NCBI RefSeq assembly: GCF_000150275.1
Contig: NW_002060944.1
Coordinates: 9,388,556-9,452,555 of the forward strand
DNA length: 64,000 nucleotides
Direction: 5' to 3'
DNA from: Trichoplax adhaerens
Lineage: Eukaryota; Animalia; Placozoa
Positions 46,981 to 64,000 of the stretch are shown here, in pieces (the first letter of the stretch is position 1; the number at the start of each line of letters is the position of its first letter). Made by a program: the position numbers and the translations under genes. A model generated the notes under the pieces. The model was given only the letters and a program-made list of their open reading frames with translations, did no database searches and had not been told where the DNA came from.

Positions 46981-46999
46981 AAATAACTAAAATCAAATA

Positions 47000-47905
47000 C
47001 TAACCTATTTATAATTGGCATACCTATAGATTATTTAACGTGCTTCTATTAAGTAAAGTACTAAGTGAGAAAACTTATTCACGACGGCATCAATCAATCA
47101 ATCAATCTAGTCAAGGATTGCAATCCAATTCGATTGATGACATCAAATCTGGCCCATAAGTCAGACATTACGTCACTATTTTGTTAACGCCAAACATTCT
47201 ACCCTAAGAACACGCTTTACACGAAGGATTCTATCCACTAATTTATTCATGATTGGCACACCTAAAGCTTATCTAATGAGCTACTTTTAAGTTAACTACT
47301 AAATGAGAAAGCTTATTTATGACGCTATCAACCAATCTAGATAAGGATTACAAACGACTTCAATTGGTAACATCAAATCTGACCGGCAAGTCAGATATTT
47401 GGTCACTGCAGCCTTAACCTTAAGTATCACCTCTATCAACATGTTTTACACGAAGGACTTTAACTACTAGCCTATTATGATTGGCACACCTTAAGATTAT
47501 TTAATATTTTCTTGACACCCGGGCAAAATACTCTATCAACACGTTTAATAGAAGGAATTTATTTACTAAGTTAGTTATGATTGGCACACCTAAAGGTTAA
47601 TTAATGTTCTCTGAACCCCAAACATTATACTCAATCAACACATTTTTAGGAAGGATTTTATCCACCAAGCTATTATGATTGGCACACCTACAGATTATTT
47701 AATGAGCTACTTTTTAAGTTAACTACTAAATGAGAGCACTTCTTCATAACGGTATCAATCAGTCAATTAATTAATCAATTTAGATGAGGATTGCAATCGA
47801 CTTCGATCGGTAACATCGAATCTGATCCTCAAGTCCGACATTTCGCCACGGCTTTCTTAACACAAAGCATTCTACTCTACCAATACATTTTATAGGAAGA
47901 ATTTT
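47000..47905. repeat. Compound tandem repeat (units ~230 and ~100 bp) with core TATGATTGGCACACCT
   Basis: ATTGG cores at 47014, 47252, 47480, 47580 and 47678 (spacings 238, 228, 100, 98). Confidence 0.85.
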
Positions 47906-48707: not shown

Positions 48708-51700
48708 ATGTTAATGCTACATTGTATTCTGATTTTATCTTGTATGATGCAACAAGGTAAGGTATCTACTTACAATCCAACAATATTTCTATCTATTACA
48801 AGATTACAATGTATTATATGCAAATGTTATTCCATTACAGTATTTGGTCTACCATATTGCTATGGATTTGTTTCGGGCACAATCTGGTTCGATGTTAATG
48901 TAGCAGGAAAAAATGAAACAACGGTCATCAATTTCTGCCGATCAACATTCTACTTTGGTAGTAACTCCAATACAGGTGGGCGTGAGAATATTAACAGATA
49001 CAGGCGTAACCTATTTCTAATTTATTTAACTTCTTAAAAACAGCAATTAATGATGGTAGAACATTTATCACCAATAGAGTCCGTTAATTATATAATTACT
49101 GATCAGCTTTTATTTCTTCTCTATCCTCATCTTTCGTTATCTTTACCTACCTACGTCATGGCTAACCTTCTATCGTGATTTTTATTTATTCATTCCATGG
49201 CAATGCAACTGATTCTTAACTAAACATTTGACTTTGTAGTTATGAATTTGAGTAGATGATAAGAGGATCCTTAGATGTGGATTCAAGCAGATAATCTGGT
49301 TATTTTTTTTATTATAATGTCGATAATTCTCCGTTAAATTTAATTTGTTATTTACTTAGCCCTATGACGTCGATGATGATCAAAATCAATTTTGAAATTC
49401 TTTACATAACTGTCAATGCAATTTATCAATTTATTTATACGATATCAATAGCGTAGGAGTCCAAATGTCAGTAGATGATGAAAAGAAAGTTGCCGTAAAT
49501 AACGTCCTAAATAACTACGATCAAAGGTGCTAATAGCCACAAATTATCCCATCATTAGTGCTGCATTTAATTCTAATTATTAATATCATTGCAGATGCTT
49601 AGAAAGAAGAGTTTGAAACTTTACGCTTGTTTCTTTATGCTGGAAAGATCGCTTTTGCATTCTTACATCATACCCAATTTCTTGAAAATAGCTACCGATT
49701 GAGTTATAGCATCTTAGATTTTAGTATCAGCTGGTCATCCTGAATAGGTTATAAACAAAGGAATACATTTAGCTACAGTAAGCTATCTATCATCCCCCTT
49801 CAACGGGATTATGCACCACTCTAAACGGTACTTCAAGATAATATGACGTATACAATTACTTCTATTCGCAAAAATTTTAATTGTTAGCCTAAACTCTTCG
49901 ATATTATGGTTCACTTTAATAACCCCAATAGGAAATTAGTGAGATCGTTCTTGTACAAATGCAAAGTATATGGCTATCGAAATGGTAAAAAATACAATAT
50001 AACAAGAACTGACATAAAATGCCAAAGGGTTACTTTTTAATTAGCAGCACTAAATTTGAAAATGCTCAATTATAAATGCAAACTTATAAAGTGTGATCAT
50101 TATCAGCCTCTAATCCAGTAATACTACCGTATCAGATTAAATAGTATGATTCTGGATTATCAAGATAGAAAGGAACAGGTTATAATCAGTGAGAATAAAT
50201 CTTGATGATAAAAATTTCAAAGATGAAAATTACTGGTACTATGTACACTTTAAATTTCAACAAATGACATTAGATCAGATAGTAATTGTAAAATGCGATT
50301 CTTCTAACAAAAATCGATTAAAAGCATATTTGCTATGGAAGGAGTGCTAAATTAGCTACAGGTTTTCCTTGTATTTTAATTACGGAATTAAATTAGATAG
50401 CTCAATAAATTTAGAGTGTTGCGGAGATAAGTTCCTGAGTATAAAATAACTGTCATATTTGCTTTCAACTATAGCCTTCAGAATTCAATCCAAGTTCATC
50501 CGCATCGCTCTTCGTATCTTCTACTATACCTTTGAAATTGATTACATAGCACCGAAGTGTATATTAAATCGTCAAAGTCTGAAAACTAGTTCGGAAGTAA
50601 TTTAGTTATAAAAACGTACATAGTAAAGAAAGAAATTAAAATCATTTATTTGCCTATTACAGAATGAATCTCGATATAGCAGTACCACTTTCTAAGTCTT
50701 GAAGTGTATTCTAAGTTATCATGCTATTAATTTTATCCATTTAAAACTAAATTTTTAGCACCATCGATCATAAAATGTCGAAATTGTAACTTGAATGAAT
50801 GTATTTCATTAACTATAAAGTAAATCTTATTCAATTTCGTCTGTAGAATAATCCAATACCATATTTTAACCTAAATTTGATCTTTTTCTACCGTATAAAA
50901 ATCCTACCTTGTAATTAAGTCAACGTTATATTCATATCTTGAATTAAGGAATGACTTATAAAAAAATATTGAAATCATAACGGAGCAGACATTTTGCCCG
51001 ATCTCCTTTACTAAATATTTTTCATAAGCATTTATTTTATTCGTTTAATACATAGTACTGAGTGGCTTGGCAACACTGCCATGTCGAAAGACAGGAAGTG
51101 AATGGTCCTTAGGAAACGAGACGGAAGTAAATTTATGCGGATGTCGATTCACAGCCATGCAGCAACTACACCAGTCTGTTCAGGTTGTACAAAATAAAAT
51201 TTCAATCTGTTTCAAGCAATTTAATGCGTTGATATAACTCACCAAAAATTAAGTTGTGCTAATAGATATGGATATCGATCCTATTTTTATTGTGCAGAAC
51301 CTTACCAACACTACGTTGGATAGCTCCGTTTTCTCCTCTAGCATCGAAGTGGATGCAATCTTGCAAAATTCTTTCTATACCCGTCCTGTGAAAGTATTCG
51401 GTAAAGCACTTCATGTTGAAGATGCAATTGAAACAGTCTATCGCTTATTTCAATTACATGTTGGTCGTACATATCAAGTGAATAAGACCAAGATATGGAC
51501 CGCTAATGTAGGTTAATTTGTATGCTACTGGCATGATGCTGAATCATAATGAACTTGAACTAATCTTACACCCTTTGATCTTCATATTTTATTGATCAAA
51601 GTGCTTATATCAAGCTGCAAGCCGAATTATCAACATAACAGCATGCAATAATGTATGTAAAATACATTACGCAAATTAATTAATTCTAATATACTGAATC

Positions 51701-54700
51701 ATATTCAACTGCGATGCTTTTATATTTTTGCACGGTAGATACTGTAAGCTGGTTCGTGTTAAACTATTTCATTTGATATTCTACATTATGCACGAGTAAA
51801 GTTTATTTTTTTGTTAATAATAGACCTCCTTAATGAGTGCAATTCTTCCAACGCTAAAAAATGATATCCAAGATCAGGTACGATGTTGTCAAGACTACCA
51901 GCAAACTCAAAACATCGCCAATTGTCCGGCTAAAGAAGGTAAAGCCATCAATCATGATTTATAATCATGTTTTCTGTGTGAATGATTGAGCTTTTCGCAT
52001 GTTAATTGATGCCGCTAATGATCGAGATAAACTATTAAGCTTCAATGGTTCAAGAAAAGAATTAAATCAGGGCATCATTAGTAAATTAATAAATAAGTAG
52101 GTGAATTAATTAAAATAGTTAAACCTACAAGCTCTTAGTAATATATCCTGCATTATTAAGTGGGTAATCTTATCCTTACACAATCGTCTATTAAACGCTC
52201 TATAAACCTTTTCTTTATTGTAATCGTAAGTAAGATGTGAAAGAATTAAGTCTAATGTCGTCTAATATTAGAAAGCTATAGCTTAGCTTTTTTATTTACC
52301 AACATTTTATCACGCTGTTACTGATGGTATTTAATTTAAAGATTTTAAATCTCTTCCATTATTCGCGATGAATTTTTTCAGTACCATACTATAGAATTTA
52401 AGCATGAAGTTGCTTTTACATTTCCTATGAGTAAGAATGCCTTGCTAATTTATTCGTAATATTCTCTCGCAGCAAAAAGCTAGAGCAGGCTAAGATGCAT
52501 AATGGCTAGTTTAAGTGCTTCTAATGTAGAAGACCTAGTAGAGATCAATTATAAAATGTTCAATATGCTGGATCACACTAGCATACATGATGGCTACTTT
52601 AAGCACTACTAATGTACATGGCCTAGAAATGACCAATTTATAAAACGACTTAGCCAGAGATAGGTAATCGCAACGAGAAAACATATTACACAATACTAAT
52701 GGGCGAATCTTGTAGAATTTGCACATAATGCATTCCTTGATATATCTACTGCTCTGGATCCCTACTTTAACTGATCCGATCTCGATTGAAATTTGATTTT
52801 GATTTTCTATTGTAGAAATTGAAGACACATGCCCGACGAATTATGCTCGTGGTTTCTTATGGGAACCAACCAAAGTTAATGTTACAATCAAAAGTAACAG
52901 GAAGGAATCTTGCAAGTTATTTACTAGCGATATAGAGCCAATGGATCAGAATTTGCATGTTCATGGTAAGTTCAATTAGATATCTTAAGCAGATATAGCG
53001 GAAAGGCAGTATTACTCTCAGTAAGAATTCTAATAATTCCATAAACACAGATAGCTACATTCACTTTAAAAGTAGCGTGCATTCAAGTTCAGTAGTTTAT
53101 TATTCATCTAGTATATTTCAGTATGTATAAAATTATATTAGATTGCAATCTAGGATTAACTGAGTCATTCCTCTAGAGAAAATAGTTTCTCTTATGAAAA
53201 AAATAAACATTAGTAGATTACCAAGTGAAATGGCATTACCGCGATATCCACCCTCCTCTCTTCTCATTTATACTTTAGTCTATTCTTCATCCTTGATTTA
53301 ATGCATACCAATACTATGCTTCGTCATCATTGACATTTTTTCAACCCACCAATGTTAATTGTTGTTAAATAGTTAAGCACTACCAGGTTCAACGTTTCTA
53401 TTCTCATACTTACATTAGACTTCTATTCTCTCTTGTTTTTAGGCCATGTAAGTAGAACATGTACATCTAACAGGCAAGCCAGCTCTGTATGGGCTTCTGT
53501 TAATGGATGTAAATGTTTCGTGACAGCAATGACAGATGTATTGGCTAAAGTAAGAACTTGTTGTATTTTATACATTAAAACATTCTGATGTTAACCTGCG
53601 GGGTTCTTGCCAATTGCCCATGATTTAATATTAATTTGCCTTTCTCTTCTCATGAATTAATTATAATAGATGAAATTAACCGTGGCCAAGCAATATACCA
53701 TGCACTACTTGAGCACACTAACTAGTTTTGTTAGAAAATATTACAAGTATAACACAGACTTTAACATAGCAACGAATGCTCAAGAGTTACTTTCTCAATC
53801 TCAGCAACAGCAGACGGATTTACAAAGCATTTACTATACTGAATTTACTGGCGTAAGTCCTCCATTCTATACTAATTTACTTGCAATAGACATTTATATC
53901 AATTCTTTTCATCTGCCAGATATTGCAATAGATAAGTGAAATAGTCTATTTCAGATCGAATTTAATATCTTGGTACTATTTATGCTTGTATTAAAGTGCT
54001 TGGCAATGACAACGATGGACTTGATCAGTAATTGGCATTCTGACAAGAATTGTCCGGCACCGGTAATAAATTTTAAGGACTGTATTGAGTGGATTATTGC
54101 CCTTGAATTTCATAGTCATTCTCTTTTCCTTACAACGATCTATAGGATAGCTCCAAGGTAGCCATGAACAACACCTTCTACAATGCATTAGCCACACTAC
54201 TCAACATGCCCAAAGAAGATGTACTCAGTAATCCTGCTTATTCACTGGAAAATAATGATACTCTGACAATGGCCATCCAAAATATTAGCATGATGGAGTT
54301 AGGTCGATCCGATCCTTGCCCATTAGTTGGAACTGTTATTCCATTACCAGCATTTAAGCCAGGATCAGGAATAACATCACCAAATCCAACAACTGCAACC
54401 ACTCCTATGGTACGTAAGCAACTCTTCTATGATTGACTTGATTAACTTACAGTCCTATCATTGTTGCTATCGCGAAAAATGATGATAATTTTTTTGTCGC
54501 TACTACTTATGGATGCTTGCCAATAGACGTTGAATTTTAAGTACTTCTTTCTAGATGCAGATAGACAAACAATCTATCTACTTGTTACCAGTTACCAGTA
54601 CTTGTTACCAGAGGGTTGATTTACTTTGCTCGCTAGTTTTATTTTTAGCTGGATGATCGATGAATTAAAATAGCTACACAGTAGAAAAGCAGCTACTTTT

Positions 54701-54954
54701 ACTACGTATCGCCTTAACTTAACACTTGTAGTGAGATTGTTCTTTGGCTACTTTCTCGAGCTAGAAATAGTCTAATTTATCCCATCCATCTTCTCATGAT
54801 GCTTTCGATTTTATATTCATATTACCTCTAGAATATCATCACGACTTCAACTTCAAGTACAGGAACAACTTCTTCTTCGATAGGAAATTATCGCCAATCA
54901 CTAGCAATCATTTATTCTCTTGCTCTGTTGCTATGGTGCAGTCTACTATTATAG
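48708..54954 (+). CDS. Predicted GPI-anchored surface protein with two HRM (HormR)-like domains, ~534 aa, 12 exons
   Basis: Phase-consistent GT-AG exons: 48708-48756, 48841-48957 (or -48975), 51056-51183, 51298-51507, 51602-51652, 51824-51938, 52816-52965, 53443-53549, 53670-53852, 53955-54062, 54146-54409, 54832-54954. Signal peptide; C-x8-W...C...C...W...CxC pattern twice; S/T stalk; hydrophobic C-terminus; AATAAA at ~54962. Confidence 0.75.
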
Positions 54955-56559
54955 AATAGAAAATAAAAAAATCAATAAGCTTTTATTTAAGATCGATTAA
55001 TCACGTTTAAGTGGATTCAATCATGGAATTATTCTGTATCACATTTATTTTCAATATAATTTCGCTGTATATTATTATGATTTTCTATTAGTAAGAACGT
55101 TATCAATGAATGAGCCGTGTAATGGATATAAACTGTATTCGAGTTATTTTAATTGCAAGCATGGAAGTGCCATTACAGCAATGTTATCGGTAATGACAGC
55201 TAATCCTCATCAAATTGTCTACTCATATTTCTCTTATGTATTAACCATGATTTCAATTTAGAATACGAGTAGTTTCATAAAACGCCTATCAGGTAGCGCT
55301 ATTTGCACAACGATTTCAGAGCTAACGAGTAGAAACTTTTCGTATTCAAGATCTGATTATACTATTCTTCCAACAAGGACATTTTGACTACTCTAATGTG
55401 CTCGATATTGAGCAACTAATTATCGTATACGAGTATAAAGGTCGGTTCTAATTCTATTCTATCTGCATAATATATGACTTCTTTATTTTTTTTTTTATTT
55501 ATTCCTTATTATTATTGAATATTCAAATAACACTTTCATAGTCTACATCTATTATTCATCGCTAATATGACGGACAAAATTAAATCTATCTATGTATATG
55601 ATTGAATTCTTCATCAACTAGCTATCTCGACACTATGTAAAACGACACCTAGAAATGATGATGATGGTGATGCAAAGTTTCGACTAGTTGGTTATAACTT
55701 AATTATTTAGCAATTTGCGCCATCTATAACTTTTAACATACCATATAAGTACGCTTGTAATCTTTCACATATGGTAATAAACTCTATATATATAACAAAA
55801 TATGGTAAATTTATCCTTTCTGACTACATATCTATATAAGTTAAATATTGGGCAATTTGCACTCGAGCAATCTCAGGTCGATCATGTAGGTAGTTGACTG
55901 TATACACAAAATATCCTTTCGCTCTATTGTGACTCAATTATTGGGCAAATATAATCTTTCCATTACCTTTATGATACAAATCATGCCAGCTATCGTCGTT
56001 TACTTCTGTTGGGCATGACTGTGTAATGTAAAAAATTTGCCCATTGCCCTAATTTGCAAACACTCAGCCACGGTAGCCTAGTATATGCAGTGGCTTCTTC
56101 AAATGGTACAGTAGTAGACAAGTGTAGCCAGCAGCTAAGTTCATGACCAGATGGAGCAGTAAAAAGTTAGTAAGGTCCCTGGACTCATTTGAAGTCATTG
56201 GCTTCGTCCTTGTTACCGATTGAAATTGGTAACGAGGAAAATTAAACTACTACAGAAAACTAAAACTACAAGCCTACTGTCAGCTTTCTCCTGCCCGACA
56301 CCTACCTACAATACTATTTCAGATACTGACAATCTCCTATAGCCAAGGAGGAAGGTAAGCGTAGAGTCAAAAGGATAGATGTGGGTCTATTGGAGCACTA
56401 TGCAGCAGTCCTATAGGTCATAGGCAAAAATTTGCGATTCCATTCGTTACATTATGATGAACTGTTAGCAATTATTAGTCTATGATACTGTTCATATGAT
56501 TCTATCTCATAGCGTAGCGCAGGAAGTGAGAAAAGTACTGAGAAAAGGTATTTCAGGGT

Positions 56560-57300
56560 CTCGCTAAAGTCTCCAACTCCATCTAGTTTTGATGGCATTT
56601 TCAGTCTGAACTGCTCTGTTTACTTTCCTGCGTTAAATGGCTTCGCTGCCGTAACGGCTCAGAAGGAATAAATCTGCAAGTCAGAAATCCGTAATTTCAT
56701 CTAAATTGACAGCTTTATCTGCAGGTAACTGTTTTATTCGTTTACTTTCTTGCCTCAACTGGCTTCGTTGAAATAAATTTGCCTGCCTGCAAGTCAGAAA
56801 TCTGTAATTTCATCTAGTTTGACAGCTTTATCTGCTGGTAACTGCTTTATTCGTTTACTTTATTGCCTCCACTGGCTTTGTTGAAATAGATCTACATGTC
56901 TGCAAGTCTCCATCTAGTTATGATCGCATCTTCAGTCGGATCTGCTTTATTTGTTTTCTTTCCTGCCTTAATTAAATGACTTCGTTGCTATACCGGCTCC
57001 GAAGGAATAACTCTGCAAATCTGAAATCTACAACTTCATCTAGTTTTAGCAGTCTTATCTGCAGGTAACTGCTTTACTCGTTTACTTTACTGCCTCAATT
57101 GGCTTCGTTGCCGTACCGGCGAAGAAGAAATAAAATCTGCAAGTCTGCAATCGACCACTTCATCTAGTTTTTGACAGTCTTACTTGCTGATCTACTGCAA
57201 TATTAACAGTATTGACTGCAGACAACTGCTTTATTTGTTTCCTTTGCTGCCTTAATCAGCTTCGAGGCGAAGAAAGAATCAATCTACAAGCTCATTACAG
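56560..57300. repeat. Degenerate tandem repeat, ~100-126-bp units
   Basis: CATCTA anchors at 56580, 56698, 56811, 56911, 57037 and 57161, each followed by CTGCT(T/C)T...TGC...GCTTCG-type blocks. Confidence 0.85.
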
Positions 57301-57556: not shown

Positions 57557-59340
57557 ATGGCTGCTAAACAAGGCAAATCTTACGTAAGTATTTCTACTTG
57601 TATGGTATTCAATGACGATGAGATTAGATGGTAGTTTAGTCATAGTAATCCTTGAAAGAAGACAACATGGTGTTTGGGTTATCCCGTCGCCATGTCGGCG
57701 CAATAGGCCAACTTAAGAACCGAGAATTGGTCTAGCAGGCCAATTTCTTATTTACAAATGGACTTATGCTACAGTAGATGAGAGATAGAAAGGGAATATG
57801 AAATCGGATTTAGATATATCTTCTTCACCTTACAATCTCAGACTCCTAGGATGTAGGAGAGAGCGCAAGGAAGGAAAACCTTTCTTGCCACTGCAGCTTT
57901 TGAACTTCACATACCTGCACCATTTCGTCGCCAGTAATGAATTGTTATTTTCTATCGGATTAACAACAACGCCAAATTGTAGCGGTAGGTCCAGTAGCTG
58001 TGTGGGAAACACTATTTCCATGCTTTAATCTGCATACTAAAGTACTTGAAAAAGTGCTACAGCATTGTAACATGCAACACTATATTAGTCAATATGATGC
58101 AATGAATAGAAATGATTACTATAAAAGAACCCATTAGGACTTTAGTGCTAAAATATCCGAATATCAAAGACCGATCTCAACCAATGGCAGCAAAGACATT
58201 GTAATAATGCAGCTCTATTTTGTTGGCTGCAAAGAATCACTGAGTAATAGTCGTATGGACACTTGCGATGATGGAAAACCAGTAGAAAGAGGATTGGTAA
58301 TGCTGCAGTGTTGTAGGTTATTTCCCCCTTTAGCTTACCACGTCTACGTACGTCAGCGCAAGTAAATTAATAGACTGCAGTACTTTGCATGGCCTGTATC
58401 GAGAACAGATTTAGCCGATAGGTCCTTGTTCGAGTTGAGATAATAGTGTAGCAAGTTTTAAAATTAGCTGGATGCCCGTAAACATGTGTACTCAAATTGT
58501 CTCATAACAGACATTCTTTATTGCTGCAGGTGATCATCATAGATAATATCTTATTGAAATACGATTCGTCTACGTTATTTGAAAAGCTATCCCAAGTGGC
58601 TTCGATCAAATGGATGTCTTTAGATACTGAAAATAAGAGTGTAACTGTTCGTTTTAATGACGACCATGATGGTAAGATAACGGCATCAATTGATGCTTAA
58701 ATGATAAATAGATCAATTAAAATTTGCAAGAATAATTGTACGCGTATACCAGTGATAAACTGTATCATTAGAGGTTTCAGATTAGACAATTTCAGGTTGT
58801 AACCGCAACTTATATACTGTACAATTATTGGAAGACAAAATTAGGAGCCTGAAATATTTCTCGAGATTAATTAGTTACCCTATAAGCAAGTCCCCTTGAC
58901 ACTTAACTAAATGGGACTGATATAGCTCGTAATCTTCATAGATTTGATCACCTTATATGTGGTTATAAAATGCGAGTTCTATAATCGCTAAATATGGTCA
59001 TCGGTCATATTTATATTCCATGTCTACAGAACGTAGAATTAGTATTTAAATGACCAAGTTTAATCATCGATTTAACCAAGATACTGCATGTTGAAAGAAT
59101 ATTCCCATCTAGTTTACTGAATAAGTACTGTAGGCTATTTAGAGATTGGTCACGAACTAAATTAGCTCGCGATGTGATTATTCGAACTAGATCATTAACT
59201 TGTATTCTGCTATTTTTATCATATATCCTGACTCGATTACTCGTACCACTTCAACATATTTAGCCGAACTCCTCGGTGAATTAGGAGCAATTACGATTGA
59301 AAGTCAGCAGTTCAAATTACGCTTGGATCTTCTGGATTGA
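57557..59340 (+). CDS. Small RRM-like protein (81 aa if the 57557 ATG is the start), La RRM2/xRRM-like
   Basis: Exons 57557-57583, 58530-58671 and 59264-59340 join in phase, with GTAAG donors: MAAKQGKSYVIIIDNILLKYDSSTLFEKLSQVASIKWMSLDTENKSVTVRFNDDHDAELLGELGAITIESQQFKLRLDLLD*. Confidence 0.55.
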
Positions 59341-60377
59341 TACAGTGTGCCGCATGGCCCACTTCTCTTGATTTTGTTACGTATTCAACAGTAAGTCGTC
59401 AAGATTTCCTCCACAGCAAACCTTTTACGTGTAGGTCGGGATAATAAGTTTAATTTCATATCATGGTTTATTTATATAGTAGTATGAGATTAGAACACGT
59501 ATTTTGGAATGCATCAGTCAACTTTTTGAGGAATCATTATGTAATATCACACTTATGAAAGTTATAATGCATTGAATGCAGCATTAACTTTGCTATTAAT
59601 TATCAATCATTCGTCTACATATATATCATGGTAATGTATTTCTGTGTAAATGTGATATACGATATCCCCGTAGACCCTTACTCGAATCGGTGTAAAATCT
59701 CAACTTGGTAAGGCCAATTTTTGGTAATTTATGTTAAGCTAGTAAGAAAATGTAACGAATTGGTGTAGAATGAAGTAGATCTGCTCTGGATTGCATTTCT
59801 TATTTATGGTTATTGTTGATATGCTGTTGTGCGACTAATGTAATTTTGGTACCAATTAAAAAAGCGTAGAAATTTTTTCTACCGGTACAGTTAGGATTAA
59901 TCACTAATAATGCCGTAGCCACCTCATTCCCATTATTTGCAATAATAAAAAGAGTACTTTATTACCATAACAATTTTTTCTCCTTTCACAATGTTACACA
60001 AACCGAGAAAACGTAAAAAAGTGATTAAAAATCGGATTAAATGATAGCAAATTAATAAGTTACCATAAAAGTCTCACTGGAATAGCTATACTACTGTAAC
60101 GGTAGATTAGGCTTTACATTAATTATTAAAGTTCAGGAATAAATATCTTAAGATCCAATACCATTCTGCATATTTTAATATGGCTATGGTTAAAGGATAT
60201 GATTAGCATCATTCGTAATCAAATAGCAAACTAGTAATGTGTAGTTTTTAAGGAGATAAAGTATGAAACAAGCAATGTTTACTGTGTTTAGGCCAAGTTG
60301 TAATATCAAATTGTTATAGATTACAATTACTACAGTATATCGTACATTAATTTAGTAGATAGGGCAATAAATTAAGG

Positions 60378-63300
60378 CTATCGATGTCTTTTCCTTTCGT
60401 GCCCCTCCTGCACACTCGTTCCAGGTCGTAGATCTGTAACAATAAATGATACGTGTAATCATCTAACATTGGACAACTATTCTGACTAAAATATTTTGGC
60501 TACAGTGTTCTTAACTTAATTATAATTATTGCAGCCTTTTATAACTTTATCAAGTCCTTAAGAATTATCAAAAAGTTAGGTAACACGTTCTTTTAAATCT
60601 CGATGACAGTCTGGAGCGATGGTAAAAAGTCACTTACTTTGATCCACAACTGCGTTACTTTTTTTCTTTACTTTGGATTTAGTTCCATCCTCAACTTGCA
60701 AATGGTCATTCATAAGTTGTACATCTTGATCACTACCAAAGCTCGACCTAAATAAATTACAAAAGAATGGAAAATGTGACTCAAACAATGCAGTAATACG
60801 CACATTTTTTGATTTAATCACTGATATAGTTACCTTAAGACGCGTTGGCTTTCTGGTTCCGCAATCTCAAAATCATCCGTAAATAAAATAGTAAAATGAG
60901 GAACTGGAGCATCGACAGTAGGTATTATGCCCCGCGCACCCTGCGGGATTTGTCCCAGATTTCCATGGAATACCAATAAATCATCGACGGATACCTAGAA
61001 ACACATGGTACGATCAACCCACAGCATTGATAAATTACGGATTGAGATCGAATATAATTATTTACCGCAAATTCTTTGACACCCCTACTAAATGTCTTGC
61101 TATAATTCCAGAGTTTAATCATCGATACTGTAACTGGACGATCGAATACAATGTACACAACATTTATCTAGTTTAAAAGGTGTTGAAAAATAATTAATTC
61201 GTCGTTGCTTAAAAAATTCTTACTACATATTTTTTACTTCGTCACGAAGGCCAAATATAAAAAGTTCAATTTTTGCAGCACATATCGTAATCGCTGATAT
61301 ACTGAAACTACCCGTTCGAATCAACTTCATGACTTACTGTATCAGGAATGACTGGTGCTAACCATAAGTGATGGCCATCGTATGTGTCATTGATTCCATC
61401 AATAAGTTTATCAGGTGTTCGAATATCACCTGTGATACCTTCCAACGAATTAATACTATGAGGATAAGCCGTAATATCTGTTCGTCAATTAAGGAAAAAT
61501 AGAATTCTTTCTACGATATAAATGATACCCTAATCAACTTAAAACCAACAGTAAAATAACATAATTTTTACAAATACATTCACGATTACCAACACAATAT
61601 TAGTAGCGACACAAGGTTACAAGATACTATTTGGACTCAATGGAATTTTATCTCCATTGCGGTCATAAAGTTCCAATCCGTTAAGTCCGATATAATAAGG
61701 ATCTCCCCAAGTGGACAATAATTCAAATTTGAATACGACTATCAAAAAATAAGTAATGGATGATGTTAACCCACCATTCAAAACATAACGATTAGCATAG
61801 TTTAGTAACTATCACATCATTACTTACAACCACACGGCATCATTAGTGGTTCATAATCTGGGACAAGTTGATTAAGACTTAATTTATTGCGCCTAATAAT
61901 TTAATTAAGCACTGTTTAATATAGAGTAAAAACCGAAAACTAAGCGTATAGATACGAAAAAGGATGAAATCTTACTTCGACTTTCGATGTGCAATCTGAT
62001 CTTCACTCTTATCAAATATAGGAGAATGTCCTGGTGAAGCATCAAATATAATTGTTTGACCATAATCGTAGTGCATATTTCCAGGTCCTATACAGAAAGT
62101 TGAAATAGAATTAGTGGCTTCTCTAGGAAAGCAAAGTTACGTTTATTCGCACTGTATATGACATATACATGTGCAACAGAAGTACAGCACCGATTAATAC
62201 ACGTAGCAACTTCTTCAGGTTGTAAGGGTATAGATAAATCAATTATTGCAATTAACATTTAAAATTTTCCAAGAGGAAATAAATCAAGGATCTTGACCTT
62301 TTCTTAATAAAAATCCACTCGGTGGTGATACAACTACACCATCCAAGCTAACATGAACGATCTTCGCCTATTATTTATAATTATTCACAATAGATAAAAG
62401 AATCTTAGTAATTGACAACTTCCTAGTATCTAATGTATCTTTCTACATATGAAATTCTAACCCCTCTTATGGTATCTTCTAATGATTTATTGTAATTCCA
62501 GATTCGAAAACCAATAATATTTACTTTCTGACTAAAAGCTATCGTTAATATATGATTCCGACCAGGAGTAAAGGGTATTAACCACATATGCTCATCGCTA
62601 ACTGTAATTGTTGTTCCATCAACCAACCTAATAAGTTACATCGAATTTTCAGTGATTTTAAGCGCATTCAGTTCCATATTTCATCTCGTCAACGGTAACA
62701 TAAATATCCTTAACTTACTTGTCAATAGTCCTACAATCATCATCATATTCTGGAAGATCATTTAAATCTCTAGGATTAGCACTTAACATGTCGACGTTAA
62801 GTTCTAGTGAGTTTCCATCAGCTCCTAGGATCTTTAGCCCAGTTAGGCCCAAGTAATGCGGATCGGACCAGGTATCAACAAAATTAAACTGCAGTACTAT
62901 TAAGTAAGAGAAGACAGTTAAAACAGTTTGATATTATCAAAGAAATGTCAATTCCTATTACCTCCACAAACATTTTCAGTACTTTCCATCCTTGGAGAAT
63001 TTCCTAATAAGTAACAAATTTATCTATTACGGCCAAATTAACGACAATTCAATTCTATAAGATAAATAGCAATTAATCCAACTGTACTAACCTACTGTTG
63101 CTGTGTCAATTCCTACCGTAAGTGGCTGTTATAAGTGTAAGTAAATTGTTAGATTAACACATATCTACAAAGGACAAAATCTCATCCATCAGGAAGATAC
63201 TTTTACTTTCTGCTTACTTCATCTACACTTTCCATCCCCAAGTCGGCGGTTGGTGGTCTAGCATCTATTTGCGATACAATTTCTTCATCTTCAGAATCTG

Positions 63301-64000
63301 TTGCGATTCTAGGTGATAACCCATCAAAACTGTGGTCAAATTGGGAGATATTTTCCAATACGTCTTCATCGGTAGTAAAAAGAATGGTCTAAACCGATAG
63401 CAACAATAATGAAATATTAGATATATTCCACCAACTACTCAATTAATTTTACTTAATTATTTTAAATAAAGGAATTCAAAAACGATTTCTAGGCTGACTA
63501 ATATGATCAATTAGCAAACATCTATTTATTTCAGACAATCCACCAATAGATACATACATCACCAAAAGAAGCCGTTCCCCCTAACGCTCCACCGATAGCT
63601 CTATTTAAGAATTTATTAAAAGTTTCATTAATGTATTTCCAAGCAAACTTTTTCTTCTAACAATTCACCATACCTGGCAATTTCACCATCAAAAATTTTA
63701 TAACCGTCTAAGAATATTTCAACTCGACGTGCTCCACGATTAGAGTGAATACGAGACTTATTATAGTTCTGCATTATGTAGGTTAAATGATGTTTTTATC
63801 AGTAAAATTTATTCACATTTAATACTGCCAAAGTTCAAGTCTACGTTTCAGTAAACTCCATCCTAAACAACTAAATCTATATTATTTAACCTAATATAGC
63901 TTATTAAACATGAATAGAAACAACGTCATATCTAACCCATAATCGAATTATGGCAACCGTTTCACGCTTATCAAAGAGAATTGTAATAAAATGATTCTTT
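60378..64000 (-). CDS. KATNIP: Katanin-interacting protein (KIAA0556, DUF4457 repeats), 3' multi-exon part; 5' end outside window
   Basis: Exons encode NYNKSRIHSNRGAR, TWSDPHYLGLTGL, HMWLIPFTPG, IWNYNKSLEDTIRG, FELLSTWGDPYYIGLNGLELYD, HLWLAPVIP, IKLWNYSKT..RGVKEF, ending LRPGTSVQEGHERKRHR* at 60378. Confidence 0.92.

What the first reader, a model, noticed from the sequence alone, without database searches (positions are those of the whole stretch)
48708..54954. Adhesion/class B GPCR-type ectodomain freed from its 7TM: tandem HRM protein with a GPI-like tail
Seen: 12 phase-consistent exons, not evident as one gene in the ORF track. They encode a signal peptide; unit 1 (YCYGFVSGTIWFDVNVAG...FC...GLATLPCRKTGSEW...LCGC); a helical block; unit 2 (TCPTNYARGFLWEPTKVNVT...SC...GHVSRTCTSNRQASSVW...GCKC); a second helical block; a P/S/T stalk; and the terminus SSSIGNYRQSLAIIYSLALLLWCSLLL*. 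Both units share a phase-1 intron inside the motif and a phase-0 intron after it, indicating an internal duplication. Known: this Cys/Trp pattern is the hormone receptor motif (HormR) of secretin and adhesion GPCRs, where it precedes the helical GAIN-A subdomain. Inference: an ectodomain-only, GPI-anchored ligand binder, decoy or co-receptor, with no GPS or 7TM. I do not recognise this architecture from characterised proteins.
Basis: partly seen in the sequence, partly recalled or inferred. Interest (0 to 1): 0.8.

Follow-up and report, generated by a model that had tools for sequence, protein, structure and literature searches.

The report
Receptor ectodomain gene without its 7TM
This Trichoplax gene encodes only the outside part of a class B (secretin/adhesion-type) G-protein-coupled receptor, probably tied to the membrane by a lipid anchor. 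Its closest relative in the genome still carries the seven membrane helices, so this copy most likely binds a ligand without signalling itself.

Summary
Twelve GT-AG, phase-consistent exons at 48708-54954 (+) form a real Trichoplax adhaerens gene. Public models are partial: TRIADDRAFT_53957 lacks four exons, and TrispH2_009597 lacks the last.

Exons differ six times less than introns between T. adhaerens and Trichoplax sp. H2. A distant placozoan fragment keeps two exons at 56-57% identity. A published cell atlas lists the gene in a co-expression module.

The key new result is a paralogue on another scaffold. It matches nine ectodomain exons, seven checked with the same phases, then continues into 7tm_2 exons. 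This gene has no 7TM or GPS, and its downstream neighbour is convergent. "Ectodomain freed from its 7TM" is therefore supported.

HRM identity is probable for unit 2:
- It is the best Pfam hit, but below threshold.
- It is the top hit of profiles built from true Trichoplax HRM half-exons.
- It shares the same two intron positions and the 107-nt exon.

Unit 1 is HRM only by inference. GAIN-A identity of the helical blocks is not supported. Structure prediction failed.

The lipid-anchor tail exon fits the textbook signal and is unusual in the window, but no transcript or public model confirms it.

I rate this a new variant of a known kind, of moderate interest.

The parts
48708..48756 (+). Exon 1: start codon and signal peptide (MLMLHCILILSCMMQQ...), ends in phase 1
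   Evidence: It is the same start as database protein P0003. It holds the highest 17-residue hydropathy in P0003, 1.82.
48841..48975 (+). Exon 2: unit 1, N-terminal half (C-x8-W-x16-C), phase 1 to phase 1
   Evidence: It is 50% identical to the paralogue exon at C1411:5947494-5947625, with Smith-Waterman z 20.
51056..51183 (+). Exon 3: unit 1, C-terminal half (G-x-A-x3-C ... W ... C-x-C) and start of the first helix, phase 1 to phase 0
   Evidence: It is 57% identical over all 42 codons to a distant placozoan fragment, L044. It is similar to exon 8, z 4.5.
51298..51507 (+). Exon 4: helical block 1
   Evidence: It is 56% identical to L044 and P0002, and the similarity stops at the donor. Against the paralogue, z is 10.4.
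51602..51652 (+). Exon 5: small Cys-loop exon (C-x13-C), phase 0 to phase 0. It is absent from the T. adhaerens public model.
   Evidence: It is present in P0003. tblastn places it at 51602-51655 in the window and at 5945433-5945380 in the paralogue, at 56% identity. z is 13.4.
51824..51938 (+). Exon 6: end of block 1 (CC ... C-P), phase 0 to phase 1
   Evidence: z 12.5.
52816..52965 (+). Exon 7: unit 2, N-terminal half (C-x9-W-E-P-T ... C), phase 1 to phase 1
   Evidence: It lies in the Pfam HRM hit region of P0003, residues 233-291. It is the top hit of 2,417 open frames for the profile of true Trichoplax HRM N-halves.
53443..53549 (+). Exon 8: unit 2, C-terminal half ([G]-H-V-S-R-T-C ... 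W ... C-K-C) and start of a helix. It is 107 nt, phase 1 to phase 0.
   Evidence: It has the same length and phases as 5 of 7 true HRM C-half exons. It is the top hit of 2,417 frames for their profile, E 0.024.
53670..53852 (+). Exon 9: helical block 2
   Evidence: 38% identity to the paralogue; z 17.7.
53997..54062 (+). Exon 10: second small Cys-loop exon (C-x17-C)
   Evidence: It is joined this way in P0001 and P0003.
54146..54409 (+). Exon 11: end of block 2 (to C-P-L-V-G), then a Pro/Ser/Thr stalk. The similarity to the paralogue ends here.
   Evidence: (31% identity, E 2.5e-5; z 16.3; 52% S/T/P in the last 25 residues).
54832..54954 (+). Exon 12 (predicted, unverified): Ser/Thr stalk, candidate omega site (SSS-I-G), spacer NYRQS, a 17-residue uncharged hydrophobic end, and the stop codon
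   Evidence: Its hydropathy is 2.45, and it is the only one of 402 open C-terminal segments in the window with such a tail. It has no T. adhaerens/H2 difference and lies in a 348-nt difference-free run. It is not in any database model.
54962..54967 (+). AATAAA, a candidate polyadenylation signal that starts 8 nt after the stop of exon 12
   Evidence: Such hexamers occur 3.7 times per kb in the window, so this is only weak support.

Best explanation
This is a functional placozoan gene (TRIADDRAFT_53957 / TrispH2_009597). Its product is the complete extracellular part of a class B (7tm_2) receptor and nothing else. The product consists of:
- a signal peptide;
- two copies of a module made of a divergent hormone-receptor-motif (HRM)-like Cys/Trp domain and a Cys-stapled helical block;
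- a Pro/Ser/Thr stalk;
- most likely, a C-terminal signal that is exchanged for a GPI lipid anchor.

The gene arose by duplication of an ancestral receptor gene whose other descendant, on scaffold C1411, still has the seven helices. The duplication predates the split between Trichoplax and at least one more distant placozoan lineage.

Shown here: the gene structure, its constraint, its exon-by-exon homology to the receptor's ectodomain, and the absence of 7TM and GPS.

Inferred: the HRM fold, the use of the tail exon, GPI anchoring, and the function. The function I think most likely is a surface-tethered ligand binder that cannot signal. It would act as a decoy or ligand-presenting co-receptor for the kind of ligand its 7TM paralogue senses. 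A soluble isoform is possible if the last intron is retained.
For: Gene reality:
- All splice sites are canonical and the frame is continuous.
- Exons 1-11 are joined identically in P0003.
- Exons carry 0.25% T. adhaerens/H2 differences against 1.46% in introns.
- A 629-bp contig of another placozoan (L044) keeps exons 3 and 4 at 57% and 56% identity, with the same lengths and splice sites.
- TriadG53957 is a member (0.925) of a co-expression module in the placozoan cell atlas (PMC10580291, Table S3).

Derived from a receptor:
- Paralogue C1411:5947640-5939427 (-) matches nine ectodomain exons, z 8.6-20 with 0 of 500 shuffles reaching the score.
- The seven of these exons whose splice sites I read have the same intron phases.
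- It then continues after a 143-nt intron into exons that hit Pfam 7tm_2 at 44.8 and 25.9 bits.

No 7TM here:
- No 7tm_2 match falls on scaffold C1413.
- No GPS or GAIN match falls in the window.
- tblastn of the paralogue's TM exons against the window finds nothing.
- The next annotated gene is convergent.

HRM:
- It is the best Pfam hit for unit 2, E 0.03-0.05.
- hhalign P values are 0.0014 (N-half) and 0.035 (C-half) in the right register.
- Exons 7 and 8 are each the top hit among 2,417 open frames for profiles of true Trichoplax HRM half-exons.
- True HRM exons have the same phase-1 intron in the Gly codon before x-A-x-R-x-C, the same phase-0 intron 11-12 residues after the last Cys, and a 107-nt C-half exon.

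Extracellular nature: 18 Cys, 12 N-glycosylation sequons and no inner hydrophobic segment.

Tail:
- Rule-based fit to a GPI signal.
- Unique among 402 open C-terminal segments in the window.
- No T. adhaerens/H2 differences.
- PIG-T and GPAA1 genes are present in the genome.
Against: - HRM stays below Pfam's cut-off (15 bits against 26.2), and unit 1 gets no profile hit at all.
- A profile of the four N-halves finds no true HRM in the genome or in the PDB.
- Both structure models are unusable (AlphaFold2 pLDDT 33.7; ESM Atlas model 0.36), so the fold is untested.
- The tail exon is in neither public model. P0003 ends by read-through of the donor at 54409, and P0001 uses another exon at about 54527-54619.
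- Its codon score is neutral.
- No transcript-derived protein spanning the junction was found.
- No ligand, binding partner or localisation is known. The function is inference from architecture and paralogy alone.
Confidence: 0.58

Rival explanations
1. The protein is a soluble, secreted ectodomain. The predicted tail exon is not used, and the mRNA ends in or just after the last intron.
For: - The RNA-guided H2 model P0003 ends by reading through the donor at 54409 (VRKQFFYD, stop).
- The JGI model uses a different last exon.
- ATTAAA lies at 54664, inside the intron.
- The codon score of the tail exon is no better than that of the JGI exon.
- No junction-spanning protein is in the databases.
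Against: - The tail exon is the only one of 402 open C-terminal segments in the window with an uncharged end of hydropathy 2.45 or more.
- It continues the Ser/Thr composition of exon 11.
- It is in frame behind a good acceptor.
- It has no T. adhaerens/H2 difference, while its intron has 7 in 422 nt.
- AATAAA starts 8 nt after its stop.
- Both forms could coexist as isoforms.
Confidence: 0.25
2. The hydrophobic end is a true membrane helix, a relic of the ancestral TM1. The protein would then be a single-pass type I membrane protein with no cytoplasmic tail, not a GPI-anchored one.
For: In the paralogue, the exon that follows the exon-11 equivalent is also phase 0. It also encodes a Ser/Thr/Asn/Gly-rich stretch followed by TM1.
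Against: - The tail exon has no detectable similarity to the paralogue's TM1 exon (z 0.6; no tblastn hit).
- The protein ends with the hydrophobic stretch, with no basic stop-transfer residues.
- Small residues and a short polar spacer precede the stretch. By established knowledge of GPI signals, this is the signature of an anchor signal.
Confidence: 0.1
3. The two Cys/Trp units are not HRM domains. They would be an unrelated or convergent disulfide-rich fold that happens to sit in front of a class B 7TM in the paralogue.
For: - Every profile score is below formal significance.
- Unit 1 has no profile hit.
- The W-to-C spacing is 16 residues, against 12 in true Trichoplax HRMs, and the loop before the split Gly is 12-23 residues against 6.
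- There is no structural test.
Against: Independent weak signals all point to the same family and the same register:
- the best Pfam hit;
- two half-domain profiles whose top hits among 2,417 frames are adjacent exons in the right order;
- two shared intron positions and phases and the same 107-nt exon;
- the position in front of a 7tm_2 domain in the paralogue.
Confidence: 0.2
4. It is a decaying truncated duplicate, or the 5' part of a longer 7TM gene that assembly or annotation has split.
For: The public T. adhaerens model is fragmentary. Truncated duplicates of large receptor families are common.
Against: - Exons are six times more conserved than introns.
- An intact orthologous fragment exists in a distant placozoan.
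- The gene is expressed in the cell atlas.
- No frame disruption occurs in 12 exons.
- No 7tm_2 signal falls on the whole scaffold or in the window.
- The downstream neighbour is convergent in both H1 and H2.
Confidence: 0.04

Closest known systems
The paralogous class B receptor gene of T. adhaerens at G000:C1411:5947640-5939427 (minus strand)
   Same: It has the same ectodomain plan, matched over nine exons: Cys/Trp unit, helical block, small Cys-loop exon, C-P end, then a second copy. Identity is 21-56%, and the intron phases are the same at the seven exons whose splice sites were read.
   Different: The paralogue continues from the C-P-L-I-G motif through about 50 residues into seven helices that match Pfam 7tm_2. 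The window gene switches at that point to a Pro/Ser/Thr stalk and a terminal hydrophobic stretch.
HRM / HormR domain (Pfam PF02793) of secretin-family and adhesion GPCRs
   Same: - The Cys, Trp and Gly pattern is in register: C-x9-W-x-P-T ... C ... G-x-V-S-R-x-C-x9-W-x7-C.
- It is the best Pfam hit for unit 2.
- The intron positions and phases are the same as in true Trichoplax HRM exons.
- In the paralogue the unit sits N-terminal to a 7tm_2 domain.
   Different: - The score is below the gathering threshold.
- The loops are longer.
- An extra C-x-C follows the last conserved Cys.
- It occurs twice in tandem.
- It is followed by a helical block with no GAIN signal.
- In this gene it is not attached to any 7TM.
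Secreted Frizzled-related proteins (sFRPs) relative to Frizzled receptors (named from my own knowledge, not tested here)
   Same: A separate gene encodes only the ligand-binding ectodomain of a GPCR family. It acts outside the cell as a decoy or modulator.
   Different: The domain is different (Frizzled CRD, class F). sFRPs are secreted with a netrin-like domain and are not GPI-anchored. No functional data exist for the placozoan gene.
GPI-anchored ligand-binding co-receptors or decoys such as GFR-alpha, CNTFR-alpha and TRAIL-R3 (named from my own knowledge)
   Same: A lipid-anchored ectodomain without a signalling part either presents ligand to a transmembrane partner or withholds it.
   Different: The folds and partners are unrelated. 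Anchoring here is predicted only.

Membership tests
HRM / HormR domain (PF02793) | Score at or above Pfam's gathering threshold (26.2 bits) | tested here: not met
   P0003 scores 14.5 bits (E 0.049) and P0001 15.1 bits (E 0.031). Both cover unit 2 only, profile positions 2-50 of 66, and HRM is the top-ranked family. Single exons give nothing, but neither do true HRM half-exons scanned alone.
HRM / HormR domain (PF02793) | Conserved Cys/Trp/Gly skeleton in register with bona fide members | tested here: inconclusive
   - hhalign against 15 true Trichoplax N-halves gives P 0.0014, and against 7 C-halves P 0.035, with C, W and the last C aligned.
- HMMs of the true halves rank exon 7 and exon 8 first among 2,417 open frames, at E 0.26 and 0.024.
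- Unit 1 is not detected.
HRM / HormR domain (PF02793) | Gene structure shared with true HRM exons of the same genome | tested here: met
   - Eight true N-half exons end with a phase-1 intron in a Gly codon.
- Seven true C-half exons start with the rest of that Gly, then x-A-S/T-R-x-C, and end 11-12 residues after the last Cys in phase 0. Five of the seven are 107 nt.
- Exon 8 here is 107 nt, starts [G]-H-V-S-R-T-C and ends 11 residues after the last Cys in phase 0.
HRM / HormR domain (PF02793) | HormR fold with its disulfide pattern | tested here: inconclusive
   AlphaFold2 without an alignment gave mean pLDDT 33.7. The ESM Atlas model has pLDDT 0.36. No fold search was meaningful.
GAIN domain / GPS (PF16489, PF01825), the mark of adhesion GPCRs | GAIN subdomain A helices after HormR, subdomain B, and the GPS motif | tested here: not met
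   - No GAIN or GPS match falls in the window or in the paralogue. The same searches find 12 GAIN and 64 GPS matches elsewhere in the genome, several right behind true HRM exons.
- No GAIN hit on P0003.
- Profiles of the helical-block exons find nothing among 344 frames downstream of true HRMs.
Class B GPCR (7tm_2, PF00002) | Seven-helix domain | tested here: not met
   - None of 141 7tm_2 matches in the genome lies on scaffold C1413.
- The paralogue's TM exons find nothing in the window.
- No inner hydrophobic segment occurs in P0003.
- The gene is a relative of a class B GPCR, not a GPCR.
GPI-anchored proteins | N-terminal signal peptide plus a C-terminal signal: small omega and omega+2 residues, a polar spacer of 5-10 residues, and a terminal hydrophobic stretch with nothing after it | tested here: met
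   By inspection against the textbook rule:
- SSS-I-G gives omega = S with omega+2 = G or S.
- The spacer is NYRQS.
- 17 uncharged hydrophobic residues end the protein.
- A signal peptide is present.

No dedicated predictor was available, and the exon itself is unverified.
GPI-anchored proteins | Anchor attachment shown (PI-PLC release, mass spectrometry), and machinery present | not testable with these tools
   Only the machinery could be checked. PIG-T (Gpi16) and GPAA1 (Gaa1) genes are present.

The most novel reading that the evidence does not exclude
Placozoans, which coordinate behaviour by secreted peptides without neurons, keep a lipid-anchored, signalling-dead copy of a class B receptor's hormone-binding ectodomain. 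It would work as a dedicated decoy or ligand-presenting co-receptor, the first stand-alone HRM-type ligand trap. Its co-expression with SUN1-, Cor1/SYCP-, Argonaute/Piwi- and SETDB1-like genes would place that regulation in meiotic or germline-like cells.
Probability: 0.15. Interest if true: 0.7.

Novelty: new variant of a known kind. Interest (0 to 1): 0.45.

Why it matters
Class B receptors are thought to have gained their hormone-binding domain early in animal evolution, and placozoans signal largely through secreted peptides. A conserved gene that keeps only that ectodomain, next to a paralogue that keeps the 7TM, is a natural experiment. It shows how receptor ectodomains become free-standing modulators, much as sFRPs did for Frizzled.

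It also gives a concrete pair of genes to test for shared ligands.

On the practical side, it shows that both public gene models are wrong at one end or the other. The receptor family concerned, with tandem HRM-like plus helical modules and no GPS, escapes Pfam annotation.

Tried and rejected
- **Exon-by-exon Pfam scan.** It found nothing. This is uninformative, because true HRM half-exons also score nothing alone.
- **Sequence searches.** Two word-index searches with P0003 and with an alignment, and one with exon 11, found only the gene's own cluster or nothing. The representative search with exon 4 found only P0001 and the fragment P0002.
- **Structure.** The PDB sequence search was blank. 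The profile of the four N-halves against the PDB and the genome returned only themselves and noise. AlphaFold2 on P0003 without an alignment gave pLDDT 33.7 and was unusable. The ESM Atlas gave no usable neighbour.
- **Second AlphaFold job.** MAFFT could not place the paralogue's exon fragments on P0003 (alignments A1, A2, A7), so no better alignment was available.
- **Joined model.** The full-length proxy was the database protein P0003, which lacks exon 12.
- **Coding score of the tail exon.** The codon-usage score was neutral.
- **Tail exon as relic TM1.** It has no similarity to the paralogue's TM1 exon.
- **Internal duplication.** By sequence, only the two C-halves are similar (z 4.5). The other exon pairs are not, so the duplication rests mainly on the parallel exon-phase pattern.
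- **Rfam.** Nothing on 44-64 kb.
- **Literature.** No paper names the gene.

Full report
**Identity of the window**

The window's assembly has 105,631,681 bases in 1,414 contigs, and the window is G000:C1413:9388556-9452555. Database proteins that match the locus letter for letter are TRIADDRAFT_53957 of Trichoplax adhaerens (P0001, 405 aa) and TrispH2_009597 of Trichoplax sp. H2 (P0003, 494 aa). The organism is therefore the placozoan T. adhaerens.

**The observation**

I rebuilt the exon chain from the DNA. Eleven exons came out at once, and a twelfth small exon (51602-51652) was revealed by P0003 and by tblastn.
- All twelve have AG acceptors and GT donors and keep one frame.
- Their coordinates are 48708-48756, 48841-48975, 51056-51183, 51298-51507, 51602-51652, 51824-51938, 52816-52965, 53443-53549, 53670-53852, 53997-54062, 54146-54409 and 54832-54954.
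- Exon GC is 0.40 against 0.31 for introns.
It differs from the window's exon translations at two residues only, N221K and I463V.
- P0001 starts from a false upstream Met in the intron before exon 4, skips exon 5, and ends in a different last exon.

All searches were made exon by exon by reference, or with the database protein P0003 as a full-length proxy. P0003 lacks exon 12.

**Is it a living gene?**

Four results say it is.
- Aligned to the H2 locus (L010, 98.7% identity over 13.6 kb), the exons carry 4 differences in 1581 bases and the introns 68 in 4666.
- The longest difference-free runs coincide with exon groups.
- A 629-bp contig from an ENA metagenome assembly (L044) carries exons 3 and 4 of an orthologue at 57% and 56% identity. 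Exon lengths are 42 and 71 codons against 42 and 70, both splice sites are kept, and the similarity stops at the exon ends.
- In the placozoan cell atlas (PMC10580291, Table S3), Tadh_TriadG53957 belongs to WGCNA module Tadh.darkslateblue with membership 0.925. Other members include SUN1-, Cor1-, Argonaute/Piwi- and SETDB1/Tudor-like genes.

I could not find that module among the curated ones in the part of the table that is held. It is listed between a curated 'meiosis' module and a 'cell_cycle_1' module. The meiotic or germline flavour is therefore a lead, not a result.

**What it comes from**

Exon 2 has one other match in the genome, at C1411:5947494-5947625 (-), with 50% identity. Exons 4 and 11 hit the same region collinearly. 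Reading that locus (L001, L002) gave four results.
- A counterpart was found for nine ectodomain exons. The nine are window exons 2-9 and 11, and they include the 18-codon Cys-loop exon (56% identity).
- The intron phases are the same at the seven whose splice sites I read.
- Smith-Waterman scores for the nine exon pairs lie 8.6-20 standard deviations above shuffles.
- After the shared C-P-L-[IV]-G motif the paralogue goes on for about 50 residues, crosses a 143-nt intron, and enters exons that encode TM1 to TM7. Two of these match Pfam 7tm_2 at 44.8 and 25.9 bits, against a cut-off of 20.6.

The window gene has nothing of the kind.
- None of the 141 7tm_2 matches in the genome is on scaffold C1413.
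- The paralogue's TM exons find nothing in the window.
- There is no GPS or GAIN match.
- The next annotated gene, a DUF4457 protein, is on the opposite strand in both H1 and H2.

'Ectodomain freed from its 7TM' is therefore a tested statement. The duplication is older than the split from the L044 organism, because L044 groups with this gene and not with the paralogue.

**Is the Cys/Trp unit an HRM?**

Formal thresholds are not reached.
- Pfam HRM is the top hit on P0003 and P0001, but with 14.5-15.1 bits against 26.2, and for unit 2 only.
- A profile of the four N-halves finds no true HRM.
- Structure prediction failed.

Three independent lines nevertheless agree.
1. hhalign against 15 true Trichoplax HRM N-halves gives P 0.0014, and against 7 C-halves P 0.035. 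Both are in the right register.
2. HMMs built from those true half-exons were searched against all 2,417 open frames of the window and the paralogue locus. Each put a unit-2 exon of this gene first: exon 7 for the N-half (E 0.26, with the paralogue's counterpart second) and exon 8 for the C-half (E 0.024). Two independent searches pointing to adjacent exons in the right order is very unlikely by chance.
3. Gene structure matches. In eight true HRM genes the N-half exon ends with a phase-1 intron inside a Gly codon. In seven of them, the C-half exon completes that Gly, reads x-A-S/T-R-x-C ... W ... C, and ends 11-12 residues later in phase 0. Five of the seven exons are 107 nt. Exon 8 here is 107 nt, completes a Gly, reads H-V-S-R-T-C ... 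W ... C, and ends 11 residues after the last Cys in phase 0.

I put HRM homology of unit 2 at about 0.8. Unit 1 is HRM by inference from its similarity to unit 2 (C-halves z 4.5), the same phases, and the shared C, G, W, C columns.

**What is not supported**

The helical blocks give no GAIN signal by Pfam. They show no similarity to the exons that follow true HRMs in eight adhesion-type genes. The 7TM paralogue also lacks GPS and GAIN matches. The family is therefore better called class B with tandem HRM-like modules than 'adhesion'.

The internal duplication is old. Apart from the C-halves, the exon pairs of the two modules are no longer similar. The case rests on the parallel five-exon phase pattern.

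**The C-terminus**

This is the weak point. There are three candidate ends:
- read-through of the donor at 54409 (H2 model, eight more codons);
- an exon at about 54527-54619 (JGI model).

For exon 12:
- It continues the Ser/Thr stalk (75% S/T/P against 52% at the end of exon 11).
- Its last 17 residues have mean hydropathy 2.45 with no charge. That property is unique among the 402 open 40-codon C-terminal segments of the whole window on both strands.
- It has no T. adhaerens/H2 difference and sits in a 348-nt difference-free run, while its intron has 7 differences in 422 nt.
- AATAAA starts 8 nt after its stop.
- SSS-I-G, the spacer NYRQS and the hydrophobic end fit the textbook GPI signal (established knowledge; no predictor was available).
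- PIG-T and GPAA1 are encoded in the genome.

Against exon 12:
- No public model uses it.
- No transcript-derived protein could be found.
- Its codon score is neutral.
- ATTAAA at 54664 could serve a shorter mRNA.

I put use of exon 12 at about 0.65-0.7 and, given use, GPI rather than a bare membrane helix at about 0.85. Exon 12 shows no similarity to the paralogue's TM1 exon, so a relic-TM1 origin is possible only by position.

**Mechanism**

Shown: the mature product is a heavily glycosylatable (12 sequons), disulfide-rich (18 Cys) extracellular protein with no membrane-spanning or cytoplasmic part. It is homologous throughout to the ligand-facing part of a class B receptor.

Inferred: it binds a ligand, or the receptor itself, at the cell surface and cannot signal. 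It would act as a decoy or as a ligand-presenting co-receptor, and perhaps also as a soluble form when the last intron is retained. Ectodomain identity to the 7TM paralogue is only 21-56% per exon, so the ligands may have diverged.

**Comparison with what is known, and verdict**

The closest analogies are sFRPs (Frizzled ectodomain genes) and GPI-anchored co-receptors or decoys. I name these from my own knowledge and did not test them. I know of no characterised stand-alone HRM protein, and the library holds no paper that names this gene.

It may be the C1411 paralogue, and it agrees with what I read there.

Verdict:
- The GAIN-A and adhesion labels are wrong or untestable.
- It is a new variant of a known kind, of moderate interest.

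Noticed in passing
G000:C1411:5939427-5947655 (-), loci L001 and L002: This is a class B (7tm_2) receptor gene whose ectodomain is a tandem of two HRM-like plus helical modules. It has only about 50 residues between the last module and TM1, and no GPS or GAIN match. It lies at the edge of a cluster of GPS-less 7tm_2 genes (C1411: 5.88-5.95 Mb). Its annotated protein could not be retrieved.
   Followed up: partly
window 48708-54954: Both public gene models are faulty. TRIADDRAFT_53957 lacks exons 1-3 and exon 5, starts from an intronic Met, and ends in an unsupported exon at about 54527-54619. TrispH2_009597 ends by intron read-through at 54409.
   Followed up: yes
L012-L043 (eight true HRM genes on C1396-C1414): True Trichoplax HRM domains share one exon plan. 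A phase-1 intron lies in the Gly codon of C-P-x4-G. The C-half exon is 107-110 nt and ends in phase 0 after C-x-S-P-x-F-x5. GAIN starts in the next exon.
   Followed up: partly
window 56880-57279, 58542-58953, 59381-59780: Three 400-nt blocks without any T. adhaerens/H2 difference lie in the unannotated 5.4 kb between this gene and the convergent DUF4457 gene. GC rises to 0.41 at 56-58 kb. No ORF, Rfam or gene model explains them.
   Followed up: no
window 47431-47704 and 56674-56908: Tandem repeats of 99 bp (2.8 copies) lie upstream of the gene, and of 113 bp (2.1 copies) downstream. Looser copies extend over 46999-47905 and 56564-57182.
   Followed up: no
window about 60400-64000 (-): The convergent neighbour encodes a DUF4457 protein of 1574 aa in the H2 annotation, possibly katanin-interacting-protein-like.
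   Followed up: no
PMC10580291, Table S3, module Tadh.darkslateblue: The gene is co-expressed with SUN1-, Cor1/SYCP-, Argonaute/Piwi-, SETDB1/Tudor-, translin-associated-factor-X- and SLF1-like genes. This set looks meiotic or germline-like, but the module carries no curated label in the part of the table held.
   Followed up: partly
L044 (ENA ERZ27263980, contig k141_155534): A metagenome assembly holds a 629-bp piece of a placozoan genome about 56% identical in protein to T. adhaerens at this gene. The organism is unknown.
   Followed up: partly
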